Source: Vitrella brassicaformis CCMP3155
Lineage: Eukaryota; Protista; Chromerida
Length of the DNA stretch: 64,000 nt
NCBI GenBank assembly: GCA_001179505.1
Contig: CDMY01000475.1
Coordinates: 1-64,000 of the forward strand
Direction of reading: 5' to 3'
Positions 23,575 through 41,633 of the stretch are shown here, one piece after another (the first letter of the stretch is position 1; each line of letters begins with the position of its first letter). The notes beneath the pieces are model-generated. The model ran no database searches and had not been told where the DNA came from. It saw only the letters and a list, made by a program, of their open reading frames with translations. The translations under genes were made by a program, and so were the position numbers.

Positions 23575-24146
23575 GACTTGACTGAAAGTAGGGGATGGGA
23601 AGGAGTGACTCGTTCAGCTCAGACAGCGCCTCATGGCTGCGGTGTGTGAGTCAGCAATGGGAGATGAATGATTCCTGAACGGAAGATCACAACAGAGCAA
23701 ACTCATGTCACGTGAGCCCTCGCGCTCACCCCTTCTTCTTGCGTCATTCACTGTGGTGCTTACATTCTTCTTGCGTCATCACCATCATCTCCCGGCGCCA
23801 AAGCCTTCTTTCTTCATGCGAGCTTAGCTCGCAATCTTGGGTTTTGCCCCTTTGGCGTGGTTGAAGAGATACAGAGGGCTTGTCGTGGCAACCATAGTAT
23901 CATTGTTCGTCATTTGATAGCCCGGCTGCCTCCAGCCCGCCTCAAGCAGCACAGATCTCTGCCTCTGCTGACCGACGTGACGCGCGGAGGATGCCTTGGC
24001 CTTGCCGTGTGTTATTATTGGAGCTCACCAGCTGAGCCACCTTGTGCGGGAGGCAGATCGAGTGGCGAACAGCAGATCTTGGACAGCCGAGCCTCACTCC
24101 GAGCCCTCCGTCTTTCTCCTCAGTGTCATACGAGGTGTATTGCAAA

Positions 24147-27100
24147 ATGAGGTGAGTGAGTGAGCGACACCTGCGTGACGTTGGCGTAGGACCCATCTGC
24201 CATCGTCTTCGGACGTCGTGTGATGTGTGTGTGTGTGTGTCAGTGGTCCTGCTCCAGTGGCGAACAGCAGATCCACCACAACAACCGACTCGCTGGATGA
24301 GGCCGACACCAACGGCGAGACCGACGCCGGCCACATGTACAGCCAGCTGCTGCCTGCAGACCTGCGGACGGGTGCCGGCATCTTGTTGGTCTGCATCTTC
24401 AACGAAGAGCCCTATGTGCTGCTGGCACTCAACACAGAATCTGACAAGTGGAGTGACTTTGGAGGTAGGAATGGGCCGAGGGGAGGGAGACTGGGCAGAT
24501 GTGTGTGACAATCATTGTTGCCTCGCCTCGCCTCCCCTCTCTGCTGTGTGTGTGTGTTGTGTGCAGGGAAGAAGGGGCCCCATCAGGCCACGCATCTCGA
24601 AATCGCATGTGCTGAGCTCACCCAGCAGACCTCCGGCAGCCTCTCCATGACACCATCGGCACTCAGCGCGGCCGTGCGACACGACCAGGCCACCCCGTTC
24701 CCTTTGGGCCGCCGATCAGGCGACCAGCACTCACCGGCCGACGTCACCTCCACTGCCTATGTGTGTTTTGTGGTGCCCTGGCAGTGCGGCACCGCCACAC
24801 TCGGCCATGCCAGCATACACGATCTCACAACAGCCCTCACGAGTCGTCTGCGGGAGGGGGACGGCGGCAGCCACACCAGCAGAATCGTCGCCATTTCCGT
24901 TGGGACCTTTCGCAACATGCTGCTGGGGGATGATGCGGAGGATCAGGACATGGACGAAGTGGATGCCACCGGCACCCTCCGGGACCACCTGTATCGCCTG
25001 GGGGGCCGGCTCGCGGAGGCGCTGGGGTCAATCGTCCAGTGTGGCAAGTATGTGCCCTGTGAGAGTCTGACGTGTGTGGTGGGCGTGTCGAGTGCTGGGG
25101 ATGAGCGTCAGATATGGCAGCATTGCGTCACGCAGCCAACCCTCGCCCGCATCCTCAGCTCGTTGATGCAGCACGTCCCTGCAGGGTAAGCAAAGCGGGT
25201 GCAGCATCACATATGTACCTAAATCACCGTCTGTGGTCTGTCGTGTCTGTGTGCATAATTATGTCAGCAAGGGAATGCTGGCTGTGAGGGTTGTGGTTCA
25301 GCACAAGCTCCTGATGGCGCTGGCGCGTGACGACAGCAAGCAGCCAAGTGTGTCGTTTGAGGAGATAGGTGCGGCGGCGAGTGTGGCGGGCTGCCATGGT
25401 GAGGCCATCGTCAGCGGATGGAAGAGCGTCCCGCCATCCTCACTCGCACTCGCAGGTCAGTCAGCACTGGGTGGGGTGGCTGAGTGAGTGAGTGGATGAC
25501 TGGGCAGGGCAGATTGGGGCATCGTTTCTACGTTCTGTGTGTGCCTTCAATGCAGGTGGTGGTGGTGGTGAGGGTGAGGGTCTGACTCTGGAGCCCTCCC
25601 AGGCCTTGATCGAGCTGCTGACGGCACTGGTGAGGGATAAAGCCCAGCAGATGGCCCGGCGGGCCATGTCACGGCGCATCAAAAGCGAGGATGACATGCG
25701 CAAACACGCCAGCCCCGCTCTTCGGCCATCAGTGCCACAGCCGCACAGCACCCCGCCATACACGGAGCTGCAGCCCGGCTCGCCCAGCTATGCGGAGCTG
25801 CTCCGACTGGCAGAGATCCGCGAGTTCCCGCACCGACCAAAAGTGTACCAGGTGGGGTGCGCTTGACAGCCACAGGACCGTCCAGTGATTGGTCTTGTCT
25901 TCGTCTCTGCTCAGGTCAACATGCCCGCTCGCCGAAGCGGTTTCCGTGCGTATCATGAGGCAAACAACAGCATTGTCCTAACGGCCTTCGTAAGCTACCA
26001 GCCAAGGACGGCAGGGGGATAGAGCCGACACAATCGGCGATGCCTCTCTGTCTCTCTGTGTGTGCTGTGTGTGTGTGTGTGTGGACTGTGTTTGTCAGTA
26101 CGGCTGTGTGTCCATCGACGAGGCACTCATTTTGGCAGAGGACGGGCCCGACGTCAGCCTCGCGACCGACGACGTCATCGAGGGATTCTTCGCGCTCTGC
26201 CTGCCGTCGGTCGTCTCGGAGGACATCTGCCTTGTCCTCTCCATCGCACCAGGACACGCCTATCAGGGCGTCCCCCACACTCGCACCCTGGCGGCCCTGC
26301 AGGCCCATGGGTGCGGCAGCGTGCAGACCAACATCGGATTCTACCTCGTCCACAAGGAGCAGGTGGGTATCATATAGACGGGCACACCACATGGGACCCA
26401 CACCACCCGGCCGTGCCATTTTCCTGCCAACATATATTGGGTTGAGTTTTCAGGTGTGTGTGGACTACCTCATCGTCAAGGACCCATCGAGCTGCGAGAC
26501 TTTCCCCGACGCCCTGCAGCCTCCCCCCGAGGAGTCTCGGGCATCCGAGCTGTGGCGGGCGTGGCATCAGGCGGAGCGACGCCGTCAGGGACACGCCAAC
26601 AAGGCGGCCTCCAACAAGGACATCTACAGTGCGTGTGAGCAGGAGGTGCAGGACATCCTGGCGCAGGTCGACGGGGCGGCATCATCTGGTGGTGGCGGTG
26701 GGCTGATGCAGCAGGCTCGCCTGCTGGGCGGGCTGTGGCGCCGGCTCGAGTGGGCCGACAAGCACTACCTCGTCCAATCCTTCCCTGCCATGCGGAAGAA
26801 GACCGAGTTCGACGCCTTCATGAACCACTCGTCGCGCAATGTTTGCGTCATTACCGCGGCCACGGGCATCGGCAAGACTGTGGTGGTGCCACAGTGGACC
26901 CTCTCATGGCTGCAGACCCACCGGCCATCCGCCCTGACCGGCCCTGAGAAGGGCAGCAAGAAGCGTGTGGTGGTGCTGGTGCCTCGTCGGGAGCTCGCCA
27001 AGGAGCAAAGCCGCTTTGTGGCCGAGCTGCGAGGCGTCGGCCATGGACCTGGTGGCGAGGTGGGCTACGCCATCGGCTCACACCCCTACTACGACAACGA

Positions 27101-30100
27101 AACATCGCTCCTCTACGCCACGAGCGGGTATTTATTTTTTGCCCGGCATGTTTGTATCTGCACATGTATCTTGGTGTGTGTGAGCATGTCATGCTGGCAG
27201 GTACTTCTGGCGGCTGACGTCGTCGTCCAGCCCCCAGCAGCTTGCGGCGGACTGGGCAGCTGTCATAGTCGACGAGGTGCACGAGCGGTGCCCCCAGAGT
27301 GACATGGTCATCCACAAGCTGCGGTCGCTCAAGTATGAGCTGGGCGACGATGCGCCGGTGGTCATCCTGCTGAGTGCCACCATCGACATCGACTCATATC
27401 GGTCCTTCTTTGAGGAAAGCGACGTGCCCTTTAGTGCTATGGAATGGGTTAGTGAGGGTGGGAGGGAGGGAAGCAAAGGCAATAGAAACCATGCATGGGT
27501 CTGGTCTGCGGGAGAGCTGTCTTGCGTGTCTTGGTTGTATGTGTTAATGTGTGTTGTGTGTTGTGCAGCAAGACATGGACACGGTGTTCCCGGTGGACGT
27601 GCAGTATATGCCCATCCCTGAGGTCAAGGCGTGCGAGAAGACACGAGACGAGCTGCAGAAACAAGTGACTACAAAACCTCCACAACACGAGAACCATCCA
27701 CAGACCATTCATTTATGTGTGTGTCGACAGGGATACTTCCACGGCTTCGCTCAAGCGGTCGTCCAGGCCATCCGCAAGGCGCCGGCACTGGTCGACTCCA
27801 CACACACCACCCCCTCTCGCCGCGCCCCTCGCCGTGGTTGCTTGGTCTTCGTCGCCACGCGCCCACAAGCGGAGACCCTGTGTGTGGCGCTGCAGCTGGC
27901 ATTGCGTCAGGAAAAGGACCTGTTTGCTGAGGTCATGCCGTTCCACGCAGGCATGGACAGCCTCGACAAACAACAGGTAGGTACGAGCGGGCCCGTAGGT
28001 GGATCGGATCGTCCGTGGAATTCGCTCTCCCTTGGCCGTCCCGTGCAGGTGTTTGAGGAGGGCCCCACGCAGTCGGGCAGCGGGCAGGCCTGGCGGATTG
28101 TGGTGGCCACGACCATCGCCGAGTCTGGGCTGACGCTGCCGCATCTCGAGCTGGTGGTCGACTCAGGCAGAAAGTTCGTCAACGCCTTCGATCCCTCCCG
28201 ACAGATGTTCATCCGAGGGTTTCAATGGATATCCAAGGTGAGCCCACACGCACACCTTCATCCGGCCGTTACTGTCCTCAGCCACACCAATCACCGTGTT
28301 CTGTGCGTGTGGTCATTAGGCGTCGGCCGTTCAGCGTGCAGGTCGAGCTGGTCGCCTGAAGCCGGGTACGAGTGTCCGTCTGTTCAGCGAAACGCAGCTC
28401 GAGAACTTCCAGGCACGCTGCCCACACCCACAAGGACACACATGCATACAGAGTGTCATAGGATTGCATGCGACCCATGTCTGCAGATGTACGACGACCC
28501 TGACATCAGCCAGTGTGATCCATCTCAGTTTCTCATTAGCGAGCTGGGCGCCCGGGGGCCAGGCGGTCGGCTGCCACATGCCCATCGAGCAGATCTTTGC
28601 CAAACTCCCCTACAACATCCCTCGCGACGGCCTGTGGACGACGCTCAAGTGCCTGGTCGACTTGGGAATGGTGACGCAGGACATCCATATGGGCACCATT
28701 GCCCTCAGCGAGCTGGGCAGGAGCATCCACAACCTCCCCGTCGACCCCCGATGGGCCGGCTGCATCCTCTGCGCACACTCACACGGCTACCTGTCGCCCA
28801 TGGTGAGGGTGGCCTGCCTCGGAGACCCACTTTCGTTCGACCGGTCCCTCAAGACCGCCAGGCGACTCCGCGACAACGGCTCGAGCTTCGACGACGGCGT
28901 GAGGGGCCTGGCGGACTTCGAGACCGTCCTGGCACTCTACGAGTCGTGGGAAGAAGGCAAGGTCTCCGCCGAGCAGCTCGGCGACCTCGTGGGTGACTTC
29001 GACAAGGCAAGCCGCCCACAACACAGACATCCATTCTCTGGCTTGCTGCTCACGTCTGTCCTTTCCATCTTCGTGTGTGTGCAGGTTGAGAGTGCGGCGC
29101 GAAACATCGAGGCGACCATCTACCGCTCCCACGGCTACATTGAGCCCCAGGGGCACACCGACCGGCTGACCTGTCTCCGCCACGCCTTCTTCAAGGGCTT
29201 CTCAGACCAAGCCTGCTACCCGGACGGGGACGAGGTGCGGCTCGTGCGGCCGCGCACCCACTCCCTCCGCGTGACCCTCGACAAATCCCGAACAACACGA
29301 GTGTGGTGCGTGACCGACACCATCTACCTCTACACCTTCTTGACGGGCTTCCGCTCCTCGTCCGGCCCCGCCGAGATGGTCACCAGCGCAGTCGCGAGCG
29401 GACTCGTGGCGGTGCCAGCACAGGTAGCTGATTCGTGAGCACACGTCACGCGTGCATGCATGTGCAGATCCGATCCCATATTTGGTTCTTTCCTCCCTCT
29501 CTGTGTGTCTTGGTAAGTGGGTGGAAGACGCCGCATCAGCAGCGGGATGGTTTGACGACTGCAAGCGGGTTTTGGCTAGACGACGCGACACCGAGCAGCT
29601 TACCTTTGACGTCCCCTTCCAGTCTGGTCCACCTGCTGGCAGGGTCCCGCTGTTCCTGAAACACAAGGTAGGGAGGCCATCACACGAGAGAGAGAGAGAG
29701 GGGAAGGCAACCACGAATTCTCATCCCGGTTGTATGTGCCTCCCTCTGTGCAGCTTCCTCTCATCCAGCGTGATTTCGCCTTCGTCAAGATCCAGAAACC
29801 GACCCTGGTCCCCAACAGCAACCACGCCATGCCGACCTTTCATGTGACGGCCCCTCGGGCGGCCCAAGCCGCGGTCACACAGCGCATCACTCGCGACATG
29901 GACAGCCTCGCGCTGGCGGTGTCGAGGGTCCCTTGGAGCGAGGCCACCGTCGACCTGGCGGGGCTGCGTCAGATCGAGGACACACTTGTGGATGAGGCCA
30001 ACCGGCTGCTGGAGCGGAGCAATATCGATCCATATCGGCTGACGGTCAGCCAGACACAGATACAGACACCTATCTGCATCCATGGCGATCCCTGCCTCTG

Positions 30101-31096
30101 ATGGATGCGTGTGTGTAGGTGAACGGAACTCCATTGAACCACGCCTGGCACCACATGACGGACCTCTGTGTGCGGTCAATCAAGCTGGCGCTGCCCTACC
30201 TCAAGCGCCGCGCTGAGCGAATGCTAAGCGCACACACAGACACACACGCACACACACACACACACGCGCACAGAGAGAGAGAGAGAGAGGGAAAGATTGT
30301 GTGTGCCCTCCTCTATGTGTCGCGCAGCTGGCCAGCCGGGCCCCCATATATATATCATCGCCCACCCTCCGCCCCCTCGATGGCGGGCAGGAGAGCCCTG
30401 AGGAGTCCTGGCGTCGTGCGATGCTGTGTGACGGGCTGAGGAGCTCTGCGGGCATGCGCGACGACTCGGGCTGGGGCGACTCGGAGGAGGCTCGTATCAT
30501 GGCCTGCATATCCCACTTCATCTCGCACCACACGCAAGTAAGCACATGAGACGAGACGTGTGAGCGAATGGGTCTGTCAACGGGTGGGTGCATGGGGGGA
30601 GTGTCTGTGTGTGTGGTTTGTTCAGTTGTTTGTGTATGGCGACTTTGTCGGGCGGTATGTCATTGCCGGCGAGCACCCGGGAACCACACTGACCATCGGC
30701 TTCGACACCCATCACGGCAAGCCGCCCAACCCCACTCTCTCACCCCCTGTGGGATCTGCCGAGGACGCCATGGAGGAATGGAGTGAGCACTAAATGAGGC
30801 GCACACAGGGGGAGGGACCAATGCGAGCAGCGCAACACCTTCTCCCTCTGCCGTGTGTTCTCATCTCAGATCGTGTGGTGGATTGGGCGTCGAGCAACGA
30901 TGTGTTTCGCGTAGACGAGATGATGCGCCGCGGCCGACACACGGACGTCTTCCACGTCACGGACCCCATCCGGCCGCTCCCTCTCCATCCACCTCACCAA
31001 CTGCGCATCGCTGCGCGACGAGTGCGGGCACCCCGAAACAGAAATCCAGGCGCTGCAGCTAGGGAGCGATGGGCGTGTGGCGCTGCGTGTTGGTGA
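24147..31096 (+). CDS. multidomain DEAH/RHA-type RNA helicase with N-terminal Nudix-like and PARP/ART-like domains
   Basis: Intact SF2 motifs: TAATGIGKT (~26860), VPRRELA, VIVDEVHER (27271), LLSATID, LVFVAT, FHAG, VVATTIAESGLTL..VVDSG, QRAGRAGR (~28332); HA2-like LSELGRSIHNLPVDPRWAGCIL. Micro-exon ATGAG|GT at 24147. Accessory domains are detailed in findings. Confidence 0.85.
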
Positions 31097-32015
31097 CCCC
31101 TCTGTGGTCGGCGTGTGCGGGTGTCTGAGTGAGGTGCTGGCACGTGTGCGAGTCAAGTGTGTGAGGGTGGTGAATCCGATGGTGTTTGGTGGGCAGGAGG
31201 GGCGGGAGAGATGGCAAGCACGGGGGTGGACAGTAGAGTAGATGAGATGGGCAGGGGTGGAATTGGAATTGGGGGTCAGGGCTGACACTGGTCTGATATT
31301 GTAGCTGGCTCTCTGCCTCCATTCATTCACTCATTCATTCATTCATGCATTCATTGGGGTATGACGTCTGGAGGGCATCCCTCCACCCATCCGTCTCTGC
31401 CTTGCTGCTTGGAGCTCGTCTGTGGGGCCTCTCCCGCTCTGTCGGTGCTTGTGCGTACGTTCGTGCGGTGCGTCCATATGGGTGGGTGGGTGTATACAGT
31501 GACATTTATACACTTCCGCGCCTCCCTATGTATGTCTTGACATTCATTCGTTCATTCCATCTAGCTATATATCTCCGCGTAGATAGATAGATATATATGT
31601 ATGTGCATACGACGACCGAACAAATGATTCGTACATACGTACGTACGTACGTACGTGTGTCCATGTACGTATTATGTATACATTGTGTGTACGGGTGTTT
31701 TCCTTCGTGTTTCTTTATTTGTACGGATTGATTCCAATGGATTGATTGATGCGTGCTGTGTGTGTGTGTCCTGGATGGACGGATGGATGGATGGATGAAT
31801 GGATAGATGGATCTCCCTCGCTGTCCTTGGAGCAAGATGTTTTATCCGGGAGTGCTCAGCTGCGTGATTCGACGCCAAATGCCAACCATATTCACACAAA
31901 TACACACACACACACGCACTCACACATACGAAAAGAGCTCACCAACAAACCAAAAAAGTCGCTCACGTCTAGCAAAACTATCAATCAGCGCGGAAAGCAT
32001 CCGTGCGTCCGTCCG

Positions 32016-33086: not shown

Positions 33087-36000
33087 GCGTCGTGGTTCGC
33101 ACCATCAGCATGATCTGTTGTCGCATGAGTACCACGAGGTGACATCTCCCGAGGCGCTGCAGCACCTCCACATCTACTGCAACGCACTCACAAACGGACT
33201 CAAACACTTGTACACGCACGACTACACAGCTGGTAGGCTCGTGCTCGGATGGCGTCATCGCAGATCTCCCCTCCACCCATTGAAATCCATGCGTGTGAGT
33301 GTGTGCAGCGTTGGCCTGTGTGGAGGAGGCCCAGGTGGCGGCTTATGGCCTCGGTGATGTCAAGAAGGCCGCAGCCATGGGCAAGTAAGCACCTGCAGGC
33401 AGACAGAGATAAAGGCGGATGTTTTCTCCGTCGCCCCTTCTGTCTGTGTGTCGGTGTGTCAGGTTGATGTCTGTGATATATGGCTATAGCGGTTACGGCG
33501 GCCATGCGCGTGATGTTCTGACCGAGGTCATCGAGCAGACGGACGACCCCCTGCAGCAGACAGTCATGCTGGCGTCCCTGGCGGCCGTGGGGACCATCGA
33601 AGGCGACCTGCACACGGCACGACTGAGGCTGGAGCAGGTGAGCATCGCCTGGATGCGAAGGTCCTTTCTTCCACGTGTATGTGTATGCCTGTTCATGTGC
33701 GTATGTATTCAGGCGTTGAAGATATCTCGGCAGGCTGGGAAGGTCCGTGAGCATATCGTGCACGTCCACACACACACGGTTCTTTTTGTGATGGGTGTCG
33801 TGTCATTGGCCAGCATCTGCTGTCGCATGCTGTGCGGAGCGGCGGTGCGGGCAGCCGACTCACGCACGAGATCGCACAGATGCCACTTAGAGCCATCACC
33901 AAGTTAGCTTCCCACCCATCCCACCACAATGCCTGCCTCACTCTATGTGCTGTCTGTCTGTATGTCAGTGTGCTCTTCGGTGTCCCTGACATCCGCCTGG
34001 CCGTACAGGCGCTCCAGCAGCAAAAGAATGCATACAAGTCAGTACCCACTCTTGATAGATAGATAGATTGGTGGGCGGATTCACATGTCATCCAAAGACA
34101 CACGGGGGGGCGGGCTGACATTGCAGGTCAGTGAGCAGTGGCACGTCTTTGCGTCTATCGCTTGTGGAGGACCTGCTCGGCACCCTCACCCACCAGGCGG
34201 AGATGGCCCAGCGCAGCGACCACCCCCAGGGCCAACACACCACACACACCAAAGACGGAGACACATTCGGTGAGTCGGTGAGCCCGCCTCATGCACCATA
34301 TCCACAACACAACACACCACAACACGTTCGTTATCTGCAGATGTCGACCGAGAGGAGGCGATGCAGCTGGCCCGTTCGCAGCGTCTGCGGTTCAACACTG
34401 AGCGACTCCACCTGCTCGCCACGGCGGCGGACACACCGGGGGCCGGACTCCGTGGCTGGGGGCCGGCAGCCCTCTTAGGCCTCACTGTGACCATCCTACA
34501 GTCACCCGAATCAGCCAGTGCAGCCAAGAACGAGCGGAAACGACTGGTGGGTACCCGACATGGCNNNNNNNNNNNNNNNNNNNNNNNNNNNNNNNNNNNN
34601 NNNNNNNNNNNNNNNNNNNNNNNNNNNNNNNNNNNNNNNNNNNNNNNNNNNNNNNNNNNNNNNNNNNNNNNNNNNNNNNNNNNNNNNNNNNNNNNNNNNN
34701 NNNNNNNNNNNNNNNNNNNNNNNNNNNNNNNNNNNNNNNNNNNNNNNNNNNNNNNNNNNNNNNNNNNNNNNNNNNNNNNNNNNNNNNNNNNNNNNNNNNN
34801 NNNNNNNNNNNNNNNNNNNNNNNNNNNNNNNNNNNNNNNNNNNNNNNNNNNNNNNNNNNNNNNNGGGGGGGGTTGGTGGGTGACCCATGCAATGGCATGG
34901 AGGGAGGGAGGGAGGGACGGAGCAGAGCTGATGAGATGATATGCGTGTGTCCGTGCGGGTGCGGGTGCAGGAGGCCCAGGAGATGTTGGATTTCGTACGT
35001 TCGGTGGTGAAGGGCCACTACTCGGCCGAGACGGCGCCTAGGGGGAAGGGCCAGAAGGGCAGCACCAGCCCTGCTCCAGCGGCCTCGCTGGGTGACCTCA
35101 CACAAGACAAACTCAGAGACCTGGTGCGCGGAACATAGCCAGACCATTCATCTCGCGTCCGAACTCTCTCTCACTCTGTGTGTGTGTGTGTGTGTGTCGC
35201 GCAGCTGCGTTGGTCTCAGATGGTTCAGACGTTCCTCAACATCATCGTGGCCTTCATCGAGAGTCCCCAGCACCAGCACCTCCCATTCACCGCACAGTCG
35301 AGACAGAGCAGCAGCCTCTACGCATCCGTTCTCTCGGGCGAGGCCGACAAGGAGCGCGGCAGCGGCAGCGGCAGAGAGAGCCGGCCGGGCACCGCTGCTA
35401 GTGGTGCTGGTGCCGCCAGTGGTGGTGCAGAAGTCGCCATCGCTGCAGCAGACCCCCTGGCGGCCATCGGTGACACACACACACACACACACACAGAGAC
35501 AGAGAGAGAGAGAGAGAGAGAGAGGGCACACACACAGGGAGAGAGGGAGAGAGAGCGTTTCTGTCCATCTGTCATCTCATCTGCGGTGCATCATCTTTCT
35601 GTTTGTCTTTGTCTTTGTCTGTGTGTGTTGTCAGCGTTGCGTTTGTGTCTGCGTGAGGGCCTGAAGGGTGTGCGGCACTACCGCAGCCACGTGATGGAGG
35701 CCACCAAGGCCGCTGGACAGACAGACGAGGCCGCCAAGCACCTAGCAGAGCTGGACAAGGTGAGAGAGAGAGAGAGAGAGAGAGAGAGGGACACGTTGAT
35801 GCAGGCCTGTGCGTGTGTGCGTATGTGTTCAGGAGGTGGCGTTGTTAGAGTGGGCGTTGCAGCTGCTGCCGAAGCTCATCAAAGGAGGTGCAGGGGTAGG
35901 GGCCGCGGAAACAACAGCAATCGCAGCTGCAGCGATAACATGCCCCGCAACGCAAGAGCTCCAAGACAGGTCGGTGCCCAGGGAGGGGAAACACGTGTCC

Positions 36001-39090: not shown

Positions 39091-41633
39091 CTACACGGTC
39101 AGCTCCCTGCACACACACACACACACACACGTGTGTGTGTAGGTCCCATCAACATCCCTCTCCCCTCCCTCCCTGCTGCGTACCCACCCGTGCATTGGTC
39201 TCTTGGGGTCGTTGTAGTTGACCCAGTCGCCAGCAATGGGGGCGAAGAGCAGGTCCTTGGGCACGTTGAAGCCCTCGATGTACTCGCCCATGTGCTGGCC
39301 CGTCTGGGTGATGAGGCGGTCCTGCTCGGGGGGCAGCTCGCCCACCTCCTGGGGCGTCAGCAGAGAGTTGGCCACCAGCCAAGCCGCGTCCTTGTGCAGC
39401 AGCATGTGGCCGTACAGATCCAACAACGGCAGCAACACTGATATATATATGGATGGATGGATGGATGGATGGACGACACACACAGACAGAGACAGACACG
39501 GGCAGGTGGTGTGTGGGAGTCGGGTTGGGGGTGCTGTGAATGGAATGGTACCTGGCTGCAGTTTGCGCATCTTGGTGTCGAAAACGACGTCAGCGAAGGC
39601 CTCGAAGCACCGCTTCTCGGCAAAGGCCTCGGCGAGCTCCTGCACCAGTCGCGCCTCCTGCCGCATCCACACCTCGAAGATCTGTCCCGAGTTGCCGCCC
39701 GTCTTGAGCATCGACGCACCCAGCGCACGCCCCTTCATCACCTCTCGCTTCGCAAGCAGCCGCGACACCCTCACCGGCCCCTCACCGGCCCCGGTGTCTG
39801 CGAGCCCCTTTCGGTTCTTCCAGCCCTTCTGCACCCCGTCGAGCAGCTCCTTGGCCACCTTCTGCCACAGCACGCGGTTGTCCCCCTCCGCCGTGATGCC
39901 TGCGTGTGCGCCTGTGATGGCCTCGCCGAAGAGATTGCAGGCGAGGTAGCCCTGCCCCCCGCACCTCTCGCGGCAGATACTGGCGGTGCGCTCGGCGTGC
40001 CACGACATCATGGGTTTGATGGCGCAGCACAGCAGCAGCACCTCGTACCGCAGGGCGTCGATCTGGTCCTTGGGGGCGGCCTTGTCCTGCCGCAGAGCGT
40101 TCAGCTGCGCGTACTTGTGCTTGCACTCGGTCATGAAGAAGGTGAGGGCGTATGTGGCGGCGACGAGGGGCATGAGGGCCTGCTGCTGCAGCTGGTACTC
40201 GGCAATGGCCGTGTCGCTCTTGCCCGTGGGGCCCACGCACAGGCGGCTCTGGGAGTAGCGGACGGCGATCGTGAGGGCCAGTTTGGTCTGGCCGAGCATC
40301 ATGGAGGCGATGCACAGACGGCCGCTCAGCAGCTGGTCAGCCTGGATCACGAAACGCTGACGGCGGCCCTGCACCGTGCTCTCGAACTTGCCGCCCTTGT
40401 GAACCGTCGACACACGATCCAACAGGTGCTCACGGGGAATGCGCACCTGACCACACACACACAGACAGACACACACGCACAGATGGACGGCCGGGTGCGG
40501 GGATGTGTGTGGCTGGTTGGTCGTCTCACGTACGTCTTGGAAGTGGAGTTTGGCGTTGTCGACGCCGTTGTTGCCTATCTTGAATCCCATGTCCTCGATG
40601 GTGACGCCCTCACACACCCGACGGTCATTGTGGCGGATGCGGACGAGGAAGGGGTGCACCCCCTGGCTCTCGCTGCTCAGGCTGGGGATAATCAGCTGCG
40701 CGAACACCACACACCAGTGGGCGTGCTGCGCCCCGTTGGTTATCCAGTACTTCTGGCTGTCAGCCACACACAAACACAGAGGGAGAGAGAGGGAGAGAGA
40801 GAGGGAAGGCTTTCTCGTCTTGTGTGTTGACTTTGTTTGTCGTGTGTTTGTGTGTTTGCCCACCTGAGTGGCGTGGGGCAGTTGATGATGAACTCGTCTG
40901 TGTGTGGGTCGTACGTGGCCGTCGTCTGCATCTCCACCGCATTGTTGCCGAACCCCAACTCAGTCAACGCGAAACAACCCACCTGCACACACACACACAC
41001 ACACACACACAGAGCCAAACAGACAGACACGCAGTCAGTCGTCGTACGACCCCCAGCCCCCAACACTACCAATGAATTGAATGCACTGACTGACGCACCT
41101 GATCGAACGTGTCCACATCTGGTATGATGCCATGGTGTTTGTCGGTCCCCAGCTGCAGCAGCGTGCCGCCGAAGAGGTTGAACTGCACCGTCAGCTTGGT
41201 GGCGGTGCCGGGGTCCCCCAGAATGCCCACTGCCTCGTGCACCGTGAAGACGTTCGCCGGGTTGCGGATGAAGTCCCACACAGACACAACGCCGCCCTCA
41301 CACAGCGTCTTGAGCCGCCTGTAGGCCAACTCTGACCGACCAGTCACCAACACACAACAGAAACACGGCAGGCACTGATTCCTTCCTCTCTGCCCTGAGG
41401 TGTTGTCTTGTGCTGTGCTTGCCTCTGTGGGCGGCGAGGGCGACGTTGAATCTTGGCGTGAAGAGGTCCCTGTGCTGGCGTGCGATTCTGAAGATGCGCT
41501 GTCTGTTGTCGTGGTTGTCTGCGTCCATGAGGTGCTGCAGCTGCTCCATCACCTCCCTGTCCGACAAGGGGGATGACGCAGAGGCCGCAGGGCTGACGCT
41601 CACGTGAGCCGCAACTATCTCCAATCGATGCAT
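39091..41633 (-). CDS. ACOX: peroxisomal acyl-CoA oxidase
   Basis: [88 protein letters not shown]; N-term RLEIVAAHV is PTS2-like. Confidence 0.92.

What the first reader, a model, noticed from the sequence alone, without database searches (positions are those of the whole stretch)
24147..31096. Multidomain helicase: pseudo-Nudix + PARP/ART-like + intact DEAH helicase in one polypeptide
Seen in sequence: splicing GT-AG introns by hand gives one continuous frame. It runs from a Nudix-like domain, through a helical linker and a PARP-like domain, to a complete DEAH/RHA core with HA2 and about 500 aa of unassigned C-terminus. Established knowledge: helicase-PARP and helicase-Nudix pairings occur in RNA surveillance and antiviral proteins (ZAP/PARP13 is an inactive PARP acting in antiviral RNA decay; Nudix enzymes decap RNA and process ADP-ribose). 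Inference: this may be a lineage-specific RNA surveillance or innate-defence effector in which dead enzyme folds act as ADP-ribose, NAD or cap sensors coupled to an active ATPase motor. I do not recognise this architecture from any described family.
Basis: partly seen in the sequence, partly recalled or inferred. Interest (0 to 1): 0.85.

Follow-up and report, generated by a model that had tools for sequence, protein, structure and literature searches.

The report
Frame-broken Nudix-PARP-DEAH helicase gene

Summary
The gene is real. Twenty exons (window 23855-31934, + strand), spliced as I modelled them by hand, reproduce a 6,446-nt transcript assembly exactly, and two other RNA data sets agree. 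The Nudix-like and PARP-like exons therefore sit on the same mRNA as the helicase.

Pfam does not recognise the Nudix-like or PARP-like segments. Both align to four or five distant relatives, from a metagenome scaffold and from Logan assemblies of sequencing runs, all of unidentified organisms, whose Nudix and PARP domains are detectable and have intact motifs. Those relatives also carry a C-terminal nucleotidyltransferase-like domain. One appears to start with two Macro domains.

The claims of "one continuous frame" and an "intact helicase" fail. In all three transcript assemblies and in the genome, the family's frame shifts by one base at 28559, just after helicase motif VI. It shifts again between 30229 and 30403. 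The mRNA's main ORF is 1,240 aa: 1,095 real residues plus a 145-residue off-frame tail. The HA2/OB region and the C-terminal remnants lie in other frames. The public 1,703-aa model bridges the breaks with introns that no transcript assembly shows.

In Vitrella the Nudix, PARP and nucleotidyltransferase catalytic residues are all replaced, while helicase motifs I-VI are intact.

Verdict: a degenerate, recently frame-broken member of an apparently undescribed multi-enzyme RNA-helicase family.

The parts
23855..31934 (+). Whole mRNA: 20 exons and 19 introns. Two introns are GC-AG (28413-28486, 29007-29084); the rest are GT-AG.
   Evidence: The spliced exons equal transcript L001 exactly. L002 and L003 have the same junctions.
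24147..28996 (+). Main ORF of the mRNA (1,240 aa, P0001), spliced from exons 1-14. Residues 1-1095 are in the family frame; residues 1096-1240 are an R/P/G-rich off-frame tail.
   Evidence: An in-frame stop lies upstream of the ATG in the 5' UTR.
24374..24781 (+). Nudix-like domain (aa ~46-147, exons 2-3). The degenerate Nudix box lies at 24461-24637 (GGKK...AELTQQTSG).
   Evidence: hhalign to the family Nudix profile: 88%, E 3.4e-6. Alignment. No Pfam hit.
24782..25845 (+). Linker with a ~130-aa Vitrella-specific insertion plus a helical segment. No fold assigned.
   Evidence: Alignment A3. The AF2 model has low confidence (pLDDT 37).
25846..26483 (+). PARP/ART-like domain (aa 442-566) spread over four exons. 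The triad positions read Y (25984-26107 site), F (26177-26197 site) and G (26333-26483 site).
   Evidence: hhalign to the family PARP profile: 96%, E 3.8e-9. That profile hits PARP12/14/15/ZAP. Coordinates.
26484..28558 (+). Coiled linker plus DEAH helicase RecA1-RecA2. Motif I 26853-26879, Ia 26973-26999, II DEVHER 27271-27288, III SAT 27373-27381, V 28109-28135, VI QRAGRAGR 28332-28355.
   Evidence: Pfam DEAD 1.6e-11 and Helicase_C 1.7e-10. PDB hits DHX15/Prp43, DHX29, HrpB, DHX36 at about 1e-30 to 1e-27.
28550..28560 (+). Frame break 1. The family frame ends at 28558 and resumes one base out of register at 28560, inside the run CCCGGGGGCC.
   Evidence: The sequence is identical in the genome and in three transcript assemblies.
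28560..30229 (+). WH/HA2-ratchet/OB and alpha/beta-repeat coding remnants (exons 14b-18a) in a second frame. This frame is stop-free for 557 codons in the mRNA.
   Evidence: Family HMM positions 909-1231, E 1e-18. tblastn with P0007, E 1.7e-14. Open-frame statistics.
30230..30403 (+). Frame break 2. A (CA)n(GA)n microsatellite stretch is retained in all transcript assemblies. The second frame stops at 30437-30439.
   Evidence: The annotated intron here is absent from L001-L003.
30403..30965 (+). Nucleotidyltransferase-like domain remnant. The motif region 30526-30706 reads YGDFVGR...TLTIG, where the family has YGGFIRD...DLDVG.
   Evidence: Family C-terminal HMM, E 1e-8. Alignment A4.
30984..31238 (+). 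Possible extreme C-terminus in yet another frame, ending ...RGW as in the family. This would imply a third frame break near 30965-30984.
   Evidence: Weak: BLASTP E 0.67 and HMM E 5.6, but colinear with the family.

Best explanation
This is the Vitrella brassicaformis copy of a rare family of very large multi-enzyme RNA helicases. The family layout, read from its intact members, is: (two Macro domains in one member) - Dcp2-like Nudix hydrolase - mono-ADP-ribosyltransferase-type PARP domain (H-Y-hydrophobic) - DEAH/RHA helicase with HA2 and OB - alpha/beta KH- or ferredoxin-like repeats - (a CCCH finger in one member) - small PolyA_pol-head/Gad2-like nucleotidyltransferase. My inference for the intact enzymes is that they act on RNA ends: decapping to a 5' phosphate, ADP-ribosylating that end, unwinding, and 3' tailing, with Macro domains reading or erasing the mark. 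The Vitrella copy is degenerate. Most key catalytic residues of all three accessory enzymes are substituted. The mature mRNA carries a one-base frame break right after helicase motif VI and a second break in a microsatellite. The known transcript assemblies can therefore only encode a 1,240-aa protein (dead Nudix, dead PARP, RecA1-RecA2, off-frame tail) that lacks the HA2/OB module DEAH helicases need to grip RNA. The most likely state is a still-transcribed gene that lost accessory catalysis long ago and was recently disabled or truncated. Shown here: the transcript structure, the frame breaks, the motif states and the homology. Inferred: the family mechanism, and non-function of the truncated product.
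For: One mRNA matches the spliced genome exactly. The family HMM and P0007 map colinearly onto the transcript in frame 2, then frame 3, then frame 2 (E 2.5e-93, 1e-18, 7.8e-9). The break sequences are identical in the genome and three RNA assemblies. Intact relatives carry Pfam NUDIX (L005 ORF, 23.1 bits, above cut-off; P0008, E 1.6e-3), Pfam PARP (P0003, 30.8 bits, above cut-off; P0007, P0008 and P0016 below cut-off), the helicase domains, OB_NTP_bind, HA2_C and zf-CCCH_2. The family PARP profile hits PARP12/14/15/ZAP and the Nudix profile hits Dcp2. The C-terminal domain carries the motif YGGFIRD...D-x-D, gives weak Foldseek/VIA matches to mtPAP, TUT4/7, CCA-adding enzyme and MenT3, and scores 0.95 with 184 shared features against Atlas Gad2/PolyA_pol clusters. 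Two Macro exons join P0016 in phase through two GT-AG introns, giving a 2,130-aa ORF. Vitrella motif losses are shown. The downstream frame is stop-free for 557 codons (chance about 6e-7), so break 1 is young. Human PARP10/11/15 ADP-ribosylate phosphorylated RNA ends and macrodomain hydrolases reverse it (PMC6582358).
Confidence: 0.5

Rival explanations
1. The truncated 1,240-aa product is the functional form. It would be a pseudoenzyme scaffold in which dead Nudix and PARP folds bind cap, NAD or ADP-ribose ligands and the RecA1-RecA2 ATPase signals, with the downstream part being discarded. This is essentially the first reader's sensor idea without the HA2 module.
For: Thirteen exons and 1,095 codons stay open with all helicase motifs intact, while both solid frame breaks (and the third, weak one) lie downstream. 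Most catalytic residues of the accessory domains were replaced while the ORF survived, which suggests a long period of selection as a non-catalytic protein. ZAP, among the structures the family PARP profile hits (9e-9), has long been described (my own knowledge) as a PARP-like domain that lacks transferase activity yet functions.
Against: DEAH/RHA helicases use WH-HA2-OB to form the RNA tunnel (established knowledge of Prp43 and DHX36 structures). A stop codon six exon junctions upstream of the last exon would normally trigger mRNA decay. The downstream frame shows no nonsense mutations, so it has not been free to decay for long.
Confidence: 0.25
2. A full-length (or nearly full-length) protein is still made. 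The breaks would be bypassed by minor splice forms: an alternative acceptor at 28563 skips exactly 76 nt and restores the frame, and a GT-AG intron of about 30170-30327 removes the microsatellite. Alternatively the breaks are allelic or culture-specific variants.
For: Both bypasses are arithmetically in frame. The downstream 557-codon frame is intact. Microsatellite length is intrinsically variable.
Against: None of three independent transcript assemblies shows either bypass. The 28563 acceptor lacks the T/G-rich tract seen at the other 19 acceptors. Skipping 28487-28562 would delete residues that are conserved in the family.
Confidence: 0.17
3. The N-terminal segments are not Nudix or PARP homologues at all, and the resemblance is chance. 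The gene would be just a divergent DEAH helicase with a long novel N-terminus.
For: Pfam, PDB sequence search and the Atlas find nothing for the Vitrella segments alone. The AF2 model is of low confidence.
Against: The segments align colinearly with relatives that do score as Nudix and PARP. hhalign gives E 3.8e-9 and 3.4e-6. Domain order and spacing match the relatives.
Confidence: 0.05

Closest known systems
DEAH/RHA RNA helicases (DHX15/Prp43, DHX29, DHX36, bacterial HrpA/HrpB)
   Same: Motifs I-VI are present. The family members have RecA1-RecA2 followed by HA2-ratchet and OB. PDB sequence hits reach 2e-30 for Vitrella and 6e-70 for P0008.
   Different: No described DEAH helicase that I found carries Nudix, PARP and nucleotidyltransferase domains. 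In Vitrella the HA2/OB part is out of frame.
Mono-ART PARPs of the PARP12 / PARP14 / PARP15 / ZAP (PARP13) group
   Same: These are the best structural-sequence relatives of the family's ART domain (2e-15 to 9e-9). Intact members have an H-Y-hydrophobic triad like mono-ARTs. One member appears to be a macro-PARP, like PARP14/15. P0008 has a CCCH finger, like ZAP/PARP12. Vitrella has H-to-Y at the histidine position; from memory ZAP does too, but this was not checked here.
   Different: No WWE domain. The domain is embedded between a Nudix hydrolase and a helicase. Sequence identity is low.
Dcp2-type Nudix mRNA-decapping enzymes
   Same: The family Nudix profile's top five PDB hits are all S. 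pombe Dcp2 (9e-5), followed by human DCP2. Relatives have a canonical Nudix box.
   Different: The match is weak. There is no Dcp2 N-terminal regulatory domain. The Vitrella box reads AELTQQ.
PolyA_pol-head / CCA-adding-type nucleotidyltransferases and phage Gad2
   Same: The motif hGG(F/Y)(I/L)RD...D-x-D is present. Fold matches to CCA-adding enzyme, MenT3, mtPAP and TUTases are weak. Atlas look-alikes are Gad2/PolyA_pol clusters at 0.95.
   Different: There is no Pfam or PDB sequence hit. The domain is short and C-terminal. The catalytic Asp residues are replaced by Thr in Vitrella.
Giant-virus (Nucleocytoviricota MAG) DEAH helicases
   Same: The helicase core matches proteins of about 670-1,220 aa on 24 IMG/VR giant-virus contigs at E 1e-32 to 1e-74.
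   Different: Only the helicase core matches. No fused Nudix, PARP or nucleotidyltransferase domain was found.

Membership tests
DEAH/RHA helicase (SF2) | Motifs I (GxGKT), II (DExH), III (SAT) and VI (QRxGRAGR) in RecA1-RecA2 | tested here: met
   GIGKT, DEVHER, SAT and QRAGRAGR are located. Pfam DEAD and Helicase_C score above their cut-offs. PDB hits reach 2e-30.
DEAH/RHA helicase (SF2) | WH-HA2(ratchet)-OB module in the same polypeptide | tested here: not met
   The module is present in the DNA (family HMM, E 1e-18) but in another frame of the mRNA after the break at 28559. Pfam finds no HA2 or OB domain in the Vitrella pieces.
Nudix hydrolase | Homology to the Nudix fold | tested here: inconclusive
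   hhalign to the family Nudix profile gives 88%, E 3.4e-6. That profile hits Dcp2 at 9e-5. There is no direct Pfam or PDB hit, and the structure model is unusable.
Nudix hydrolase | Nudix box GX5EX7REUXEEXGU with catalytic Glu residues | tested here: not met
   Vitrella reads GGKKGPHQATHLEIACAELTQQTSG: R is replaced by A and two Glu by Gln. Relatives keep REFDEETG.
PARP / ARTD ADP-ribosyltransferase | Homology to the PARP catalytic fold | tested here: met
   hhalign gives 96%, E 3.8e-9, to the family profile. The profile hits PARP12 at 2.1e-15. The evidence is transitive; there is no direct Pfam hit.
PARP / ARTD ADP-ribosyltransferase | NAD-binding H-Y-E or H-Y-hydrophobic triad | tested here: not met
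   Vitrella has Y, F and G at the three aligned positions. Relatives have H, Y and V/W/Y.
Pol-beta-fold nucleotidyltransferase (PolyA_pol head / Gad2-like) | hGG...RD and D-x-D metal-binding motif, plus the fold | tested here: not met
   Relatives carry YGGFIRD...MDIDVG. Vitrella carries YGDFVGR...TLTIG. Fold evidence exists for relative P0008 only and is weak.
Macro-PARP (PARP9/14/15-like) | Macro domain(s) in the same protein as the PARP domain | tested here: not met
   No Macro domain was found in the Vitrella mRNA or in the neighbouring ORFs scanned. Macro domains are present only in the L004 relative, by inferred splicing.

The most novel reading that the evidence does not exclude
The intact relatives define a new class of single-chain RNA-end processing machines. 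In this reading a Dcp2-like Nudix exposes a 5' phosphate, a mono-ART PARP caps it with ADP-ribose, Macro domains read or erase the mark, and a DEAH motor and a 3' nucleotidyltransferase work on the same RNA, for antiviral or RNA-quality control. The Vitrella copy would be a naturally inactivated, ligand-sensing derivative that is still produced by frame-restoring isoforms.
Probability: 0.12. Interest if true: 0.85.

Novelty: new variant of a known kind. Interest (0 to 1): 0.55.

Why it matters
RNA ADP-ribosylation by PARPs is so far known mostly from test-tube work on human enzymes. A natural protein that joins a decapping-type Nudix, a mono-ART PARP, Macro domains, an RNA helicase and a tailing-type nucleotidyltransferase in one chain would be strong genomic evidence that ADP-ribose marking of RNA ends is a real pathway. 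It would also supply a tractable enzyme for testing that idea.

For the Vitrella locus itself the value is more modest. It is a well-documented case of a transcribed gene caught early in decay, or converted to a pseudoenzyme. It also shows that the public protein model is an artefact of forcing a continuous frame.

Tried and rejected
- **RNA/DNA read evidence:** Transcript assemblies were used instead.
- **Direct Pfam, PDB-sequence and Atlas searches with the Vitrella Nudix-like and PARP-like pieces:** nothing found.
- **AF2 of Vitrella residues 30-585 with a 7-row alignment:** pLDDT 37, unusable, so no fold search was run on it.
- **Word-indexed homologue searches** (P0008 N-terminus, full-length alignment, N-terminal alignment): these returned only the query itself or generic HrpA-like helicases. 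Family size is therefore unknown.
- **PDB sequence search with the C-terminal profile:** no hit.
- **Giant-virus origin:** IMG/VR holds relatives of the helicase core only. The PARP and nucleotidyltransferase profiles found none. The PARP gene next to the L008 helicase is an ordinary WGR-PARP.
- **A tiny intron or alternative junction rescuing break 1 within the assembled transcripts:** rejected, because the mRNA sequence is fixed and identical to the genome.
- **Programmed +1 frameshifting:** no recognisable slip or stall site, and not testable here.
- **Neighbouring genes:** no Macro, PARP or Nudix domain in the ORFs scanned.
- **Literature:** no paper on this architecture in the searchable library.
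Full report
**What is there**

The window has about 60% G+C and holds spliced eukaryotic genes. I spliced the + strand by hand between 24147 and 31096. A search of 1.84 billion representative proteins with the largest helicase exon returned a 100%-identical 1,240-aa protein, P0001. Its cluster includes CEM15967.1 / A0A0G4FP09, an unnamed 'RNA helicase' of Vitrella brassicaformis CCMP3155 (P0017, 1,703 aa), plus MMETSP transcript ORFs.

P0001 is encoded on three transcript assemblies from three different data sets: JGI 3300017148, Logan ERR558152 and Logan SRR646408. These align to the window in 20 blocks. Concatenating those 20 exons (23855-31934) reproduces the 6,446-nt transcript L001 exactly.

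The Nudix-like, PARP-like and helicase exons therefore belong to one mRNA. Two of the 19 introns are GC-AG (28413-28486 and 29007-29084).

**The frame is not continuous**

The ORF that starts at 24147 runs through 13 exons and into exon 14, then stops at 28996.

- **Mapping of relatives.** A family HMM built only from the non-Vitrella relatives maps colinearly on the mRNA in three pieces. Positions 179-890 fall in frame 2 (E 2.5e-93), positions 909-1231 in frame 3 (E 1e-18), and positions 1321-1397 in frame 2 again (E 7.8e-9). tblastn with the closest relative, P0007, gives the same pattern.
- **Break 1.** The last family-frame residues (…ELGARG) end at 28558. The next frame (QAVGCHMPIEQIF…) starts at 28560, inside the run CCCGGGGGCC. 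Residues 1096-1240 of P0001 are an R/P/G-rich off-frame tail.
- **Break 2.** This lies between 30229 and 30403, across a (CA)n(GA)n microsatellite that all three assemblies retain.
- **Possible break 3.** A third break near 30965-30984 is suggested only by weak, colinear matches to the family's extreme C-terminus, which ends …RGW.
- **The public model.** The 1,703-aa model keeps one frame by inserting introns that no transcript assembly shows. At break 1 this turns motif VI, QRAGRAGR, into QRAAKRSS.
- **Age of break 1.** The downstream frame is still stop-free for 557 codons. The chance expectation is about 6e-7, and off-frame runs in this mRNA reach only 139-174 codons. Break 1 is therefore recent, or it is bypassed in molecules I could not see.

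**Domain identities**

Taken alone, the Vitrella N-terminal segments hit nothing in Pfam, PDB sequences or the Atlas. An AF2 model was unusable (pLDDT 37). The relatives settle the question.

| Relative | Source | Pfam hits |
|---|---|---|
| P0008 / P0021 (1,667 / 1,672 aa) | ENA metagenome scaffold; a Tara Oceans fragment is in the same cluster | NUDIX (E 1.6e-3), PARP, DEAD, Helicase_C, HA2_C, OB_NTP_bind, zf-CCCH_2 |
| P0016 (1,715 aa) | 37-kb Logan contig | PARP, helicase, HA2_C |
| P0007 (1,394 aa) | Logan contig L005 | PARP, helicase; an upstream ORF scores NUDIX above the Pfam cut-off |
| P0003 (fragment) | Logan contig L031 | PARP above the cut-off, weak NUDIX, DEAD |

- **PARP.** A PARP profile built without Vitrella hits PARP12 (2.1e-15), PARP14, PARP15 and ZAP (9e-9).
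- **Nudix.** The Nudix profile's best hits are Dcp2 decapping enzymes (8.9e-5).
- **Vitrella segments.** They align to these profiles at 96% (E 3.8e-9) and 88% (E 3.4e-6).
- **Helicase.** It is a bona fide DEAH/RHA member.

**The 'unassigned' C-terminus**

An AF2 model of P0008 residues 1200-1667 (pLDDT 62) gave two results.

- The last domain gave weak but consistent matches to Pol-beta-fold nucleotidyltransferases: mtPAP, TUT4/7, CCA-adding enzyme and MenT3.
- That last domain carries the class-II signature YGGFIRD…MDIDVG.
- The Atlas places it with Gad2/PolyA_pol clusters (score 0.95, 184 shared features).
- Pfam and PDB sequence searches do not see it, so I call it a candidate nucleotidyltransferase.

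**Extra context**

On contig L004, two ORFs with Macro domains (E 1.8e-41 and 2.3e-9) lie just upstream of P0016. Two GT-AG introns of 94 and 69 nt join them in phase to P0016, giving one 2,130-aa ORF. This splicing is inferred; there is no transcript for it. It would make that member a macro-PARP helicase, and it ties the family to ADP-ribose.

**State of the Vitrella copy**

| Element | Intact relatives | Vitrella |
|---|---|---|
| Nudix box | REFDEETG | AELTQQTSG |
| PARP triad | H-Y-V/W/Y | Y-F-G |
| Nucleotidyltransferase motif | GG…RD…D-x-D | GD…GR…T-x-T |
| Helicase motifs I-VI | intact | intact |

The history I infer has two stages. The accessory domains lost catalysis while the ORF was still maintained, which is a pseudoenzyme stage. 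Recent frame breaks then cut off everything after RecA2.

**Mechanism**

For the intact family I infer an RNA-end machine. Decapping by the Nudix domain would leave a 5' phosphate. Human PARP10/11/15 ADP-ribosylate phosphorylated RNA ends, and macrodomain hydrolases reverse this (PMC6582358). A DEAH motor and a 3' nucleotidyltransferase would act on the same RNA. None of this was tested.

For Vitrella I rank the possibilities as follows:

- a recently disabled, still-transcribed gene (0.5);
- a functional truncated pseudoenzyme-ATPase (0.25);
- a full-length protein made through unseen isoforms or alleles (0.17);
- chance resemblance of the N-terminal segments to Nudix and PARP (0.05).

**Novelty**

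I found no paper describing a Nudix-PARP-DEAH(-nucleotidyltransferase) protein. All the domains are known kinds, so this is a new architecture, not a new principle. Family size and host organisms remain unknown because the sensitive search could be run only once and with a divergent query.

Earlier notes of this scan on the same stretch (s1-235833, s1-227079) reached the same 'dead domains' reading. Other notes report a separate Nudix-RWD-PARP-like gene with intact motifs elsewhere in this genome (s1-242728, s1-201661), which I could not examine.

Noticed in passing
window 28413-28486 and 29007-29084: Two of the gene's 19 introns use GC-AG boundaries (CAG|GCACGC and AAG|GCAAGC). Both are confirmed by three transcript assemblies.
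   Followed up: partly
window 28320-28560 and 30170-30327 (public model CEM15967.1 / P0017): The deposited 1,703-aa protein model keeps one frame only through introns and micro-exons that are absent from all transcript assemblies. One of them destroys helicase motif VI. The model should not be used for domain or structure work.
   Followed up: yes
L004:8593-15148: Two Macro-domain ORFs join the Nudix-PARP-helicase ORF P0016 in phase through two GT-AG introns, giving a 2,130-aa ORF. A second, split DEAH helicase paralogue lies at L004:4252-5877 on the minus strand.
   Followed up: partly
L006-L029 (IMG/VR giant-virus contigs): Giant-virus MAGs encode DEAH helicases of about 670-1,220 aa that match this family's helicase core at E 1e-32 to 1e-74. 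In L008 an ordinary WGR-PARP_reg-PARP gene lies about 1 kb away on the other strand.
   Followed up: partly
L005:2-796 versus L005:762-4946: In the closest relative's contig, the Nudix domain sits in a separate, overlapping upstream ORF in another frame from the PARP-helicase ORF. This could be a frame break or a retained intron in that organism too.
   Followed up: no
P0019 (MMETSP Transcript_36973): This ORF covers HA2 to the microsatellite and then ends in 30-odd residues that match nothing in the window. It is probably a chimeric assembly across the CA repeat.
   Followed up: partly
window 34500-34999: G+C drops sharply to 25% in a window that is otherwise about 60% G+C.
   Followed up: no
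window 39091-40863 (-): An exon-sized ORF with acyl-CoA oxidase / acyl-CoA dehydrogenase domains. The other neighbouring ORFs scanned had no Pfam hit.
   Followed up: no
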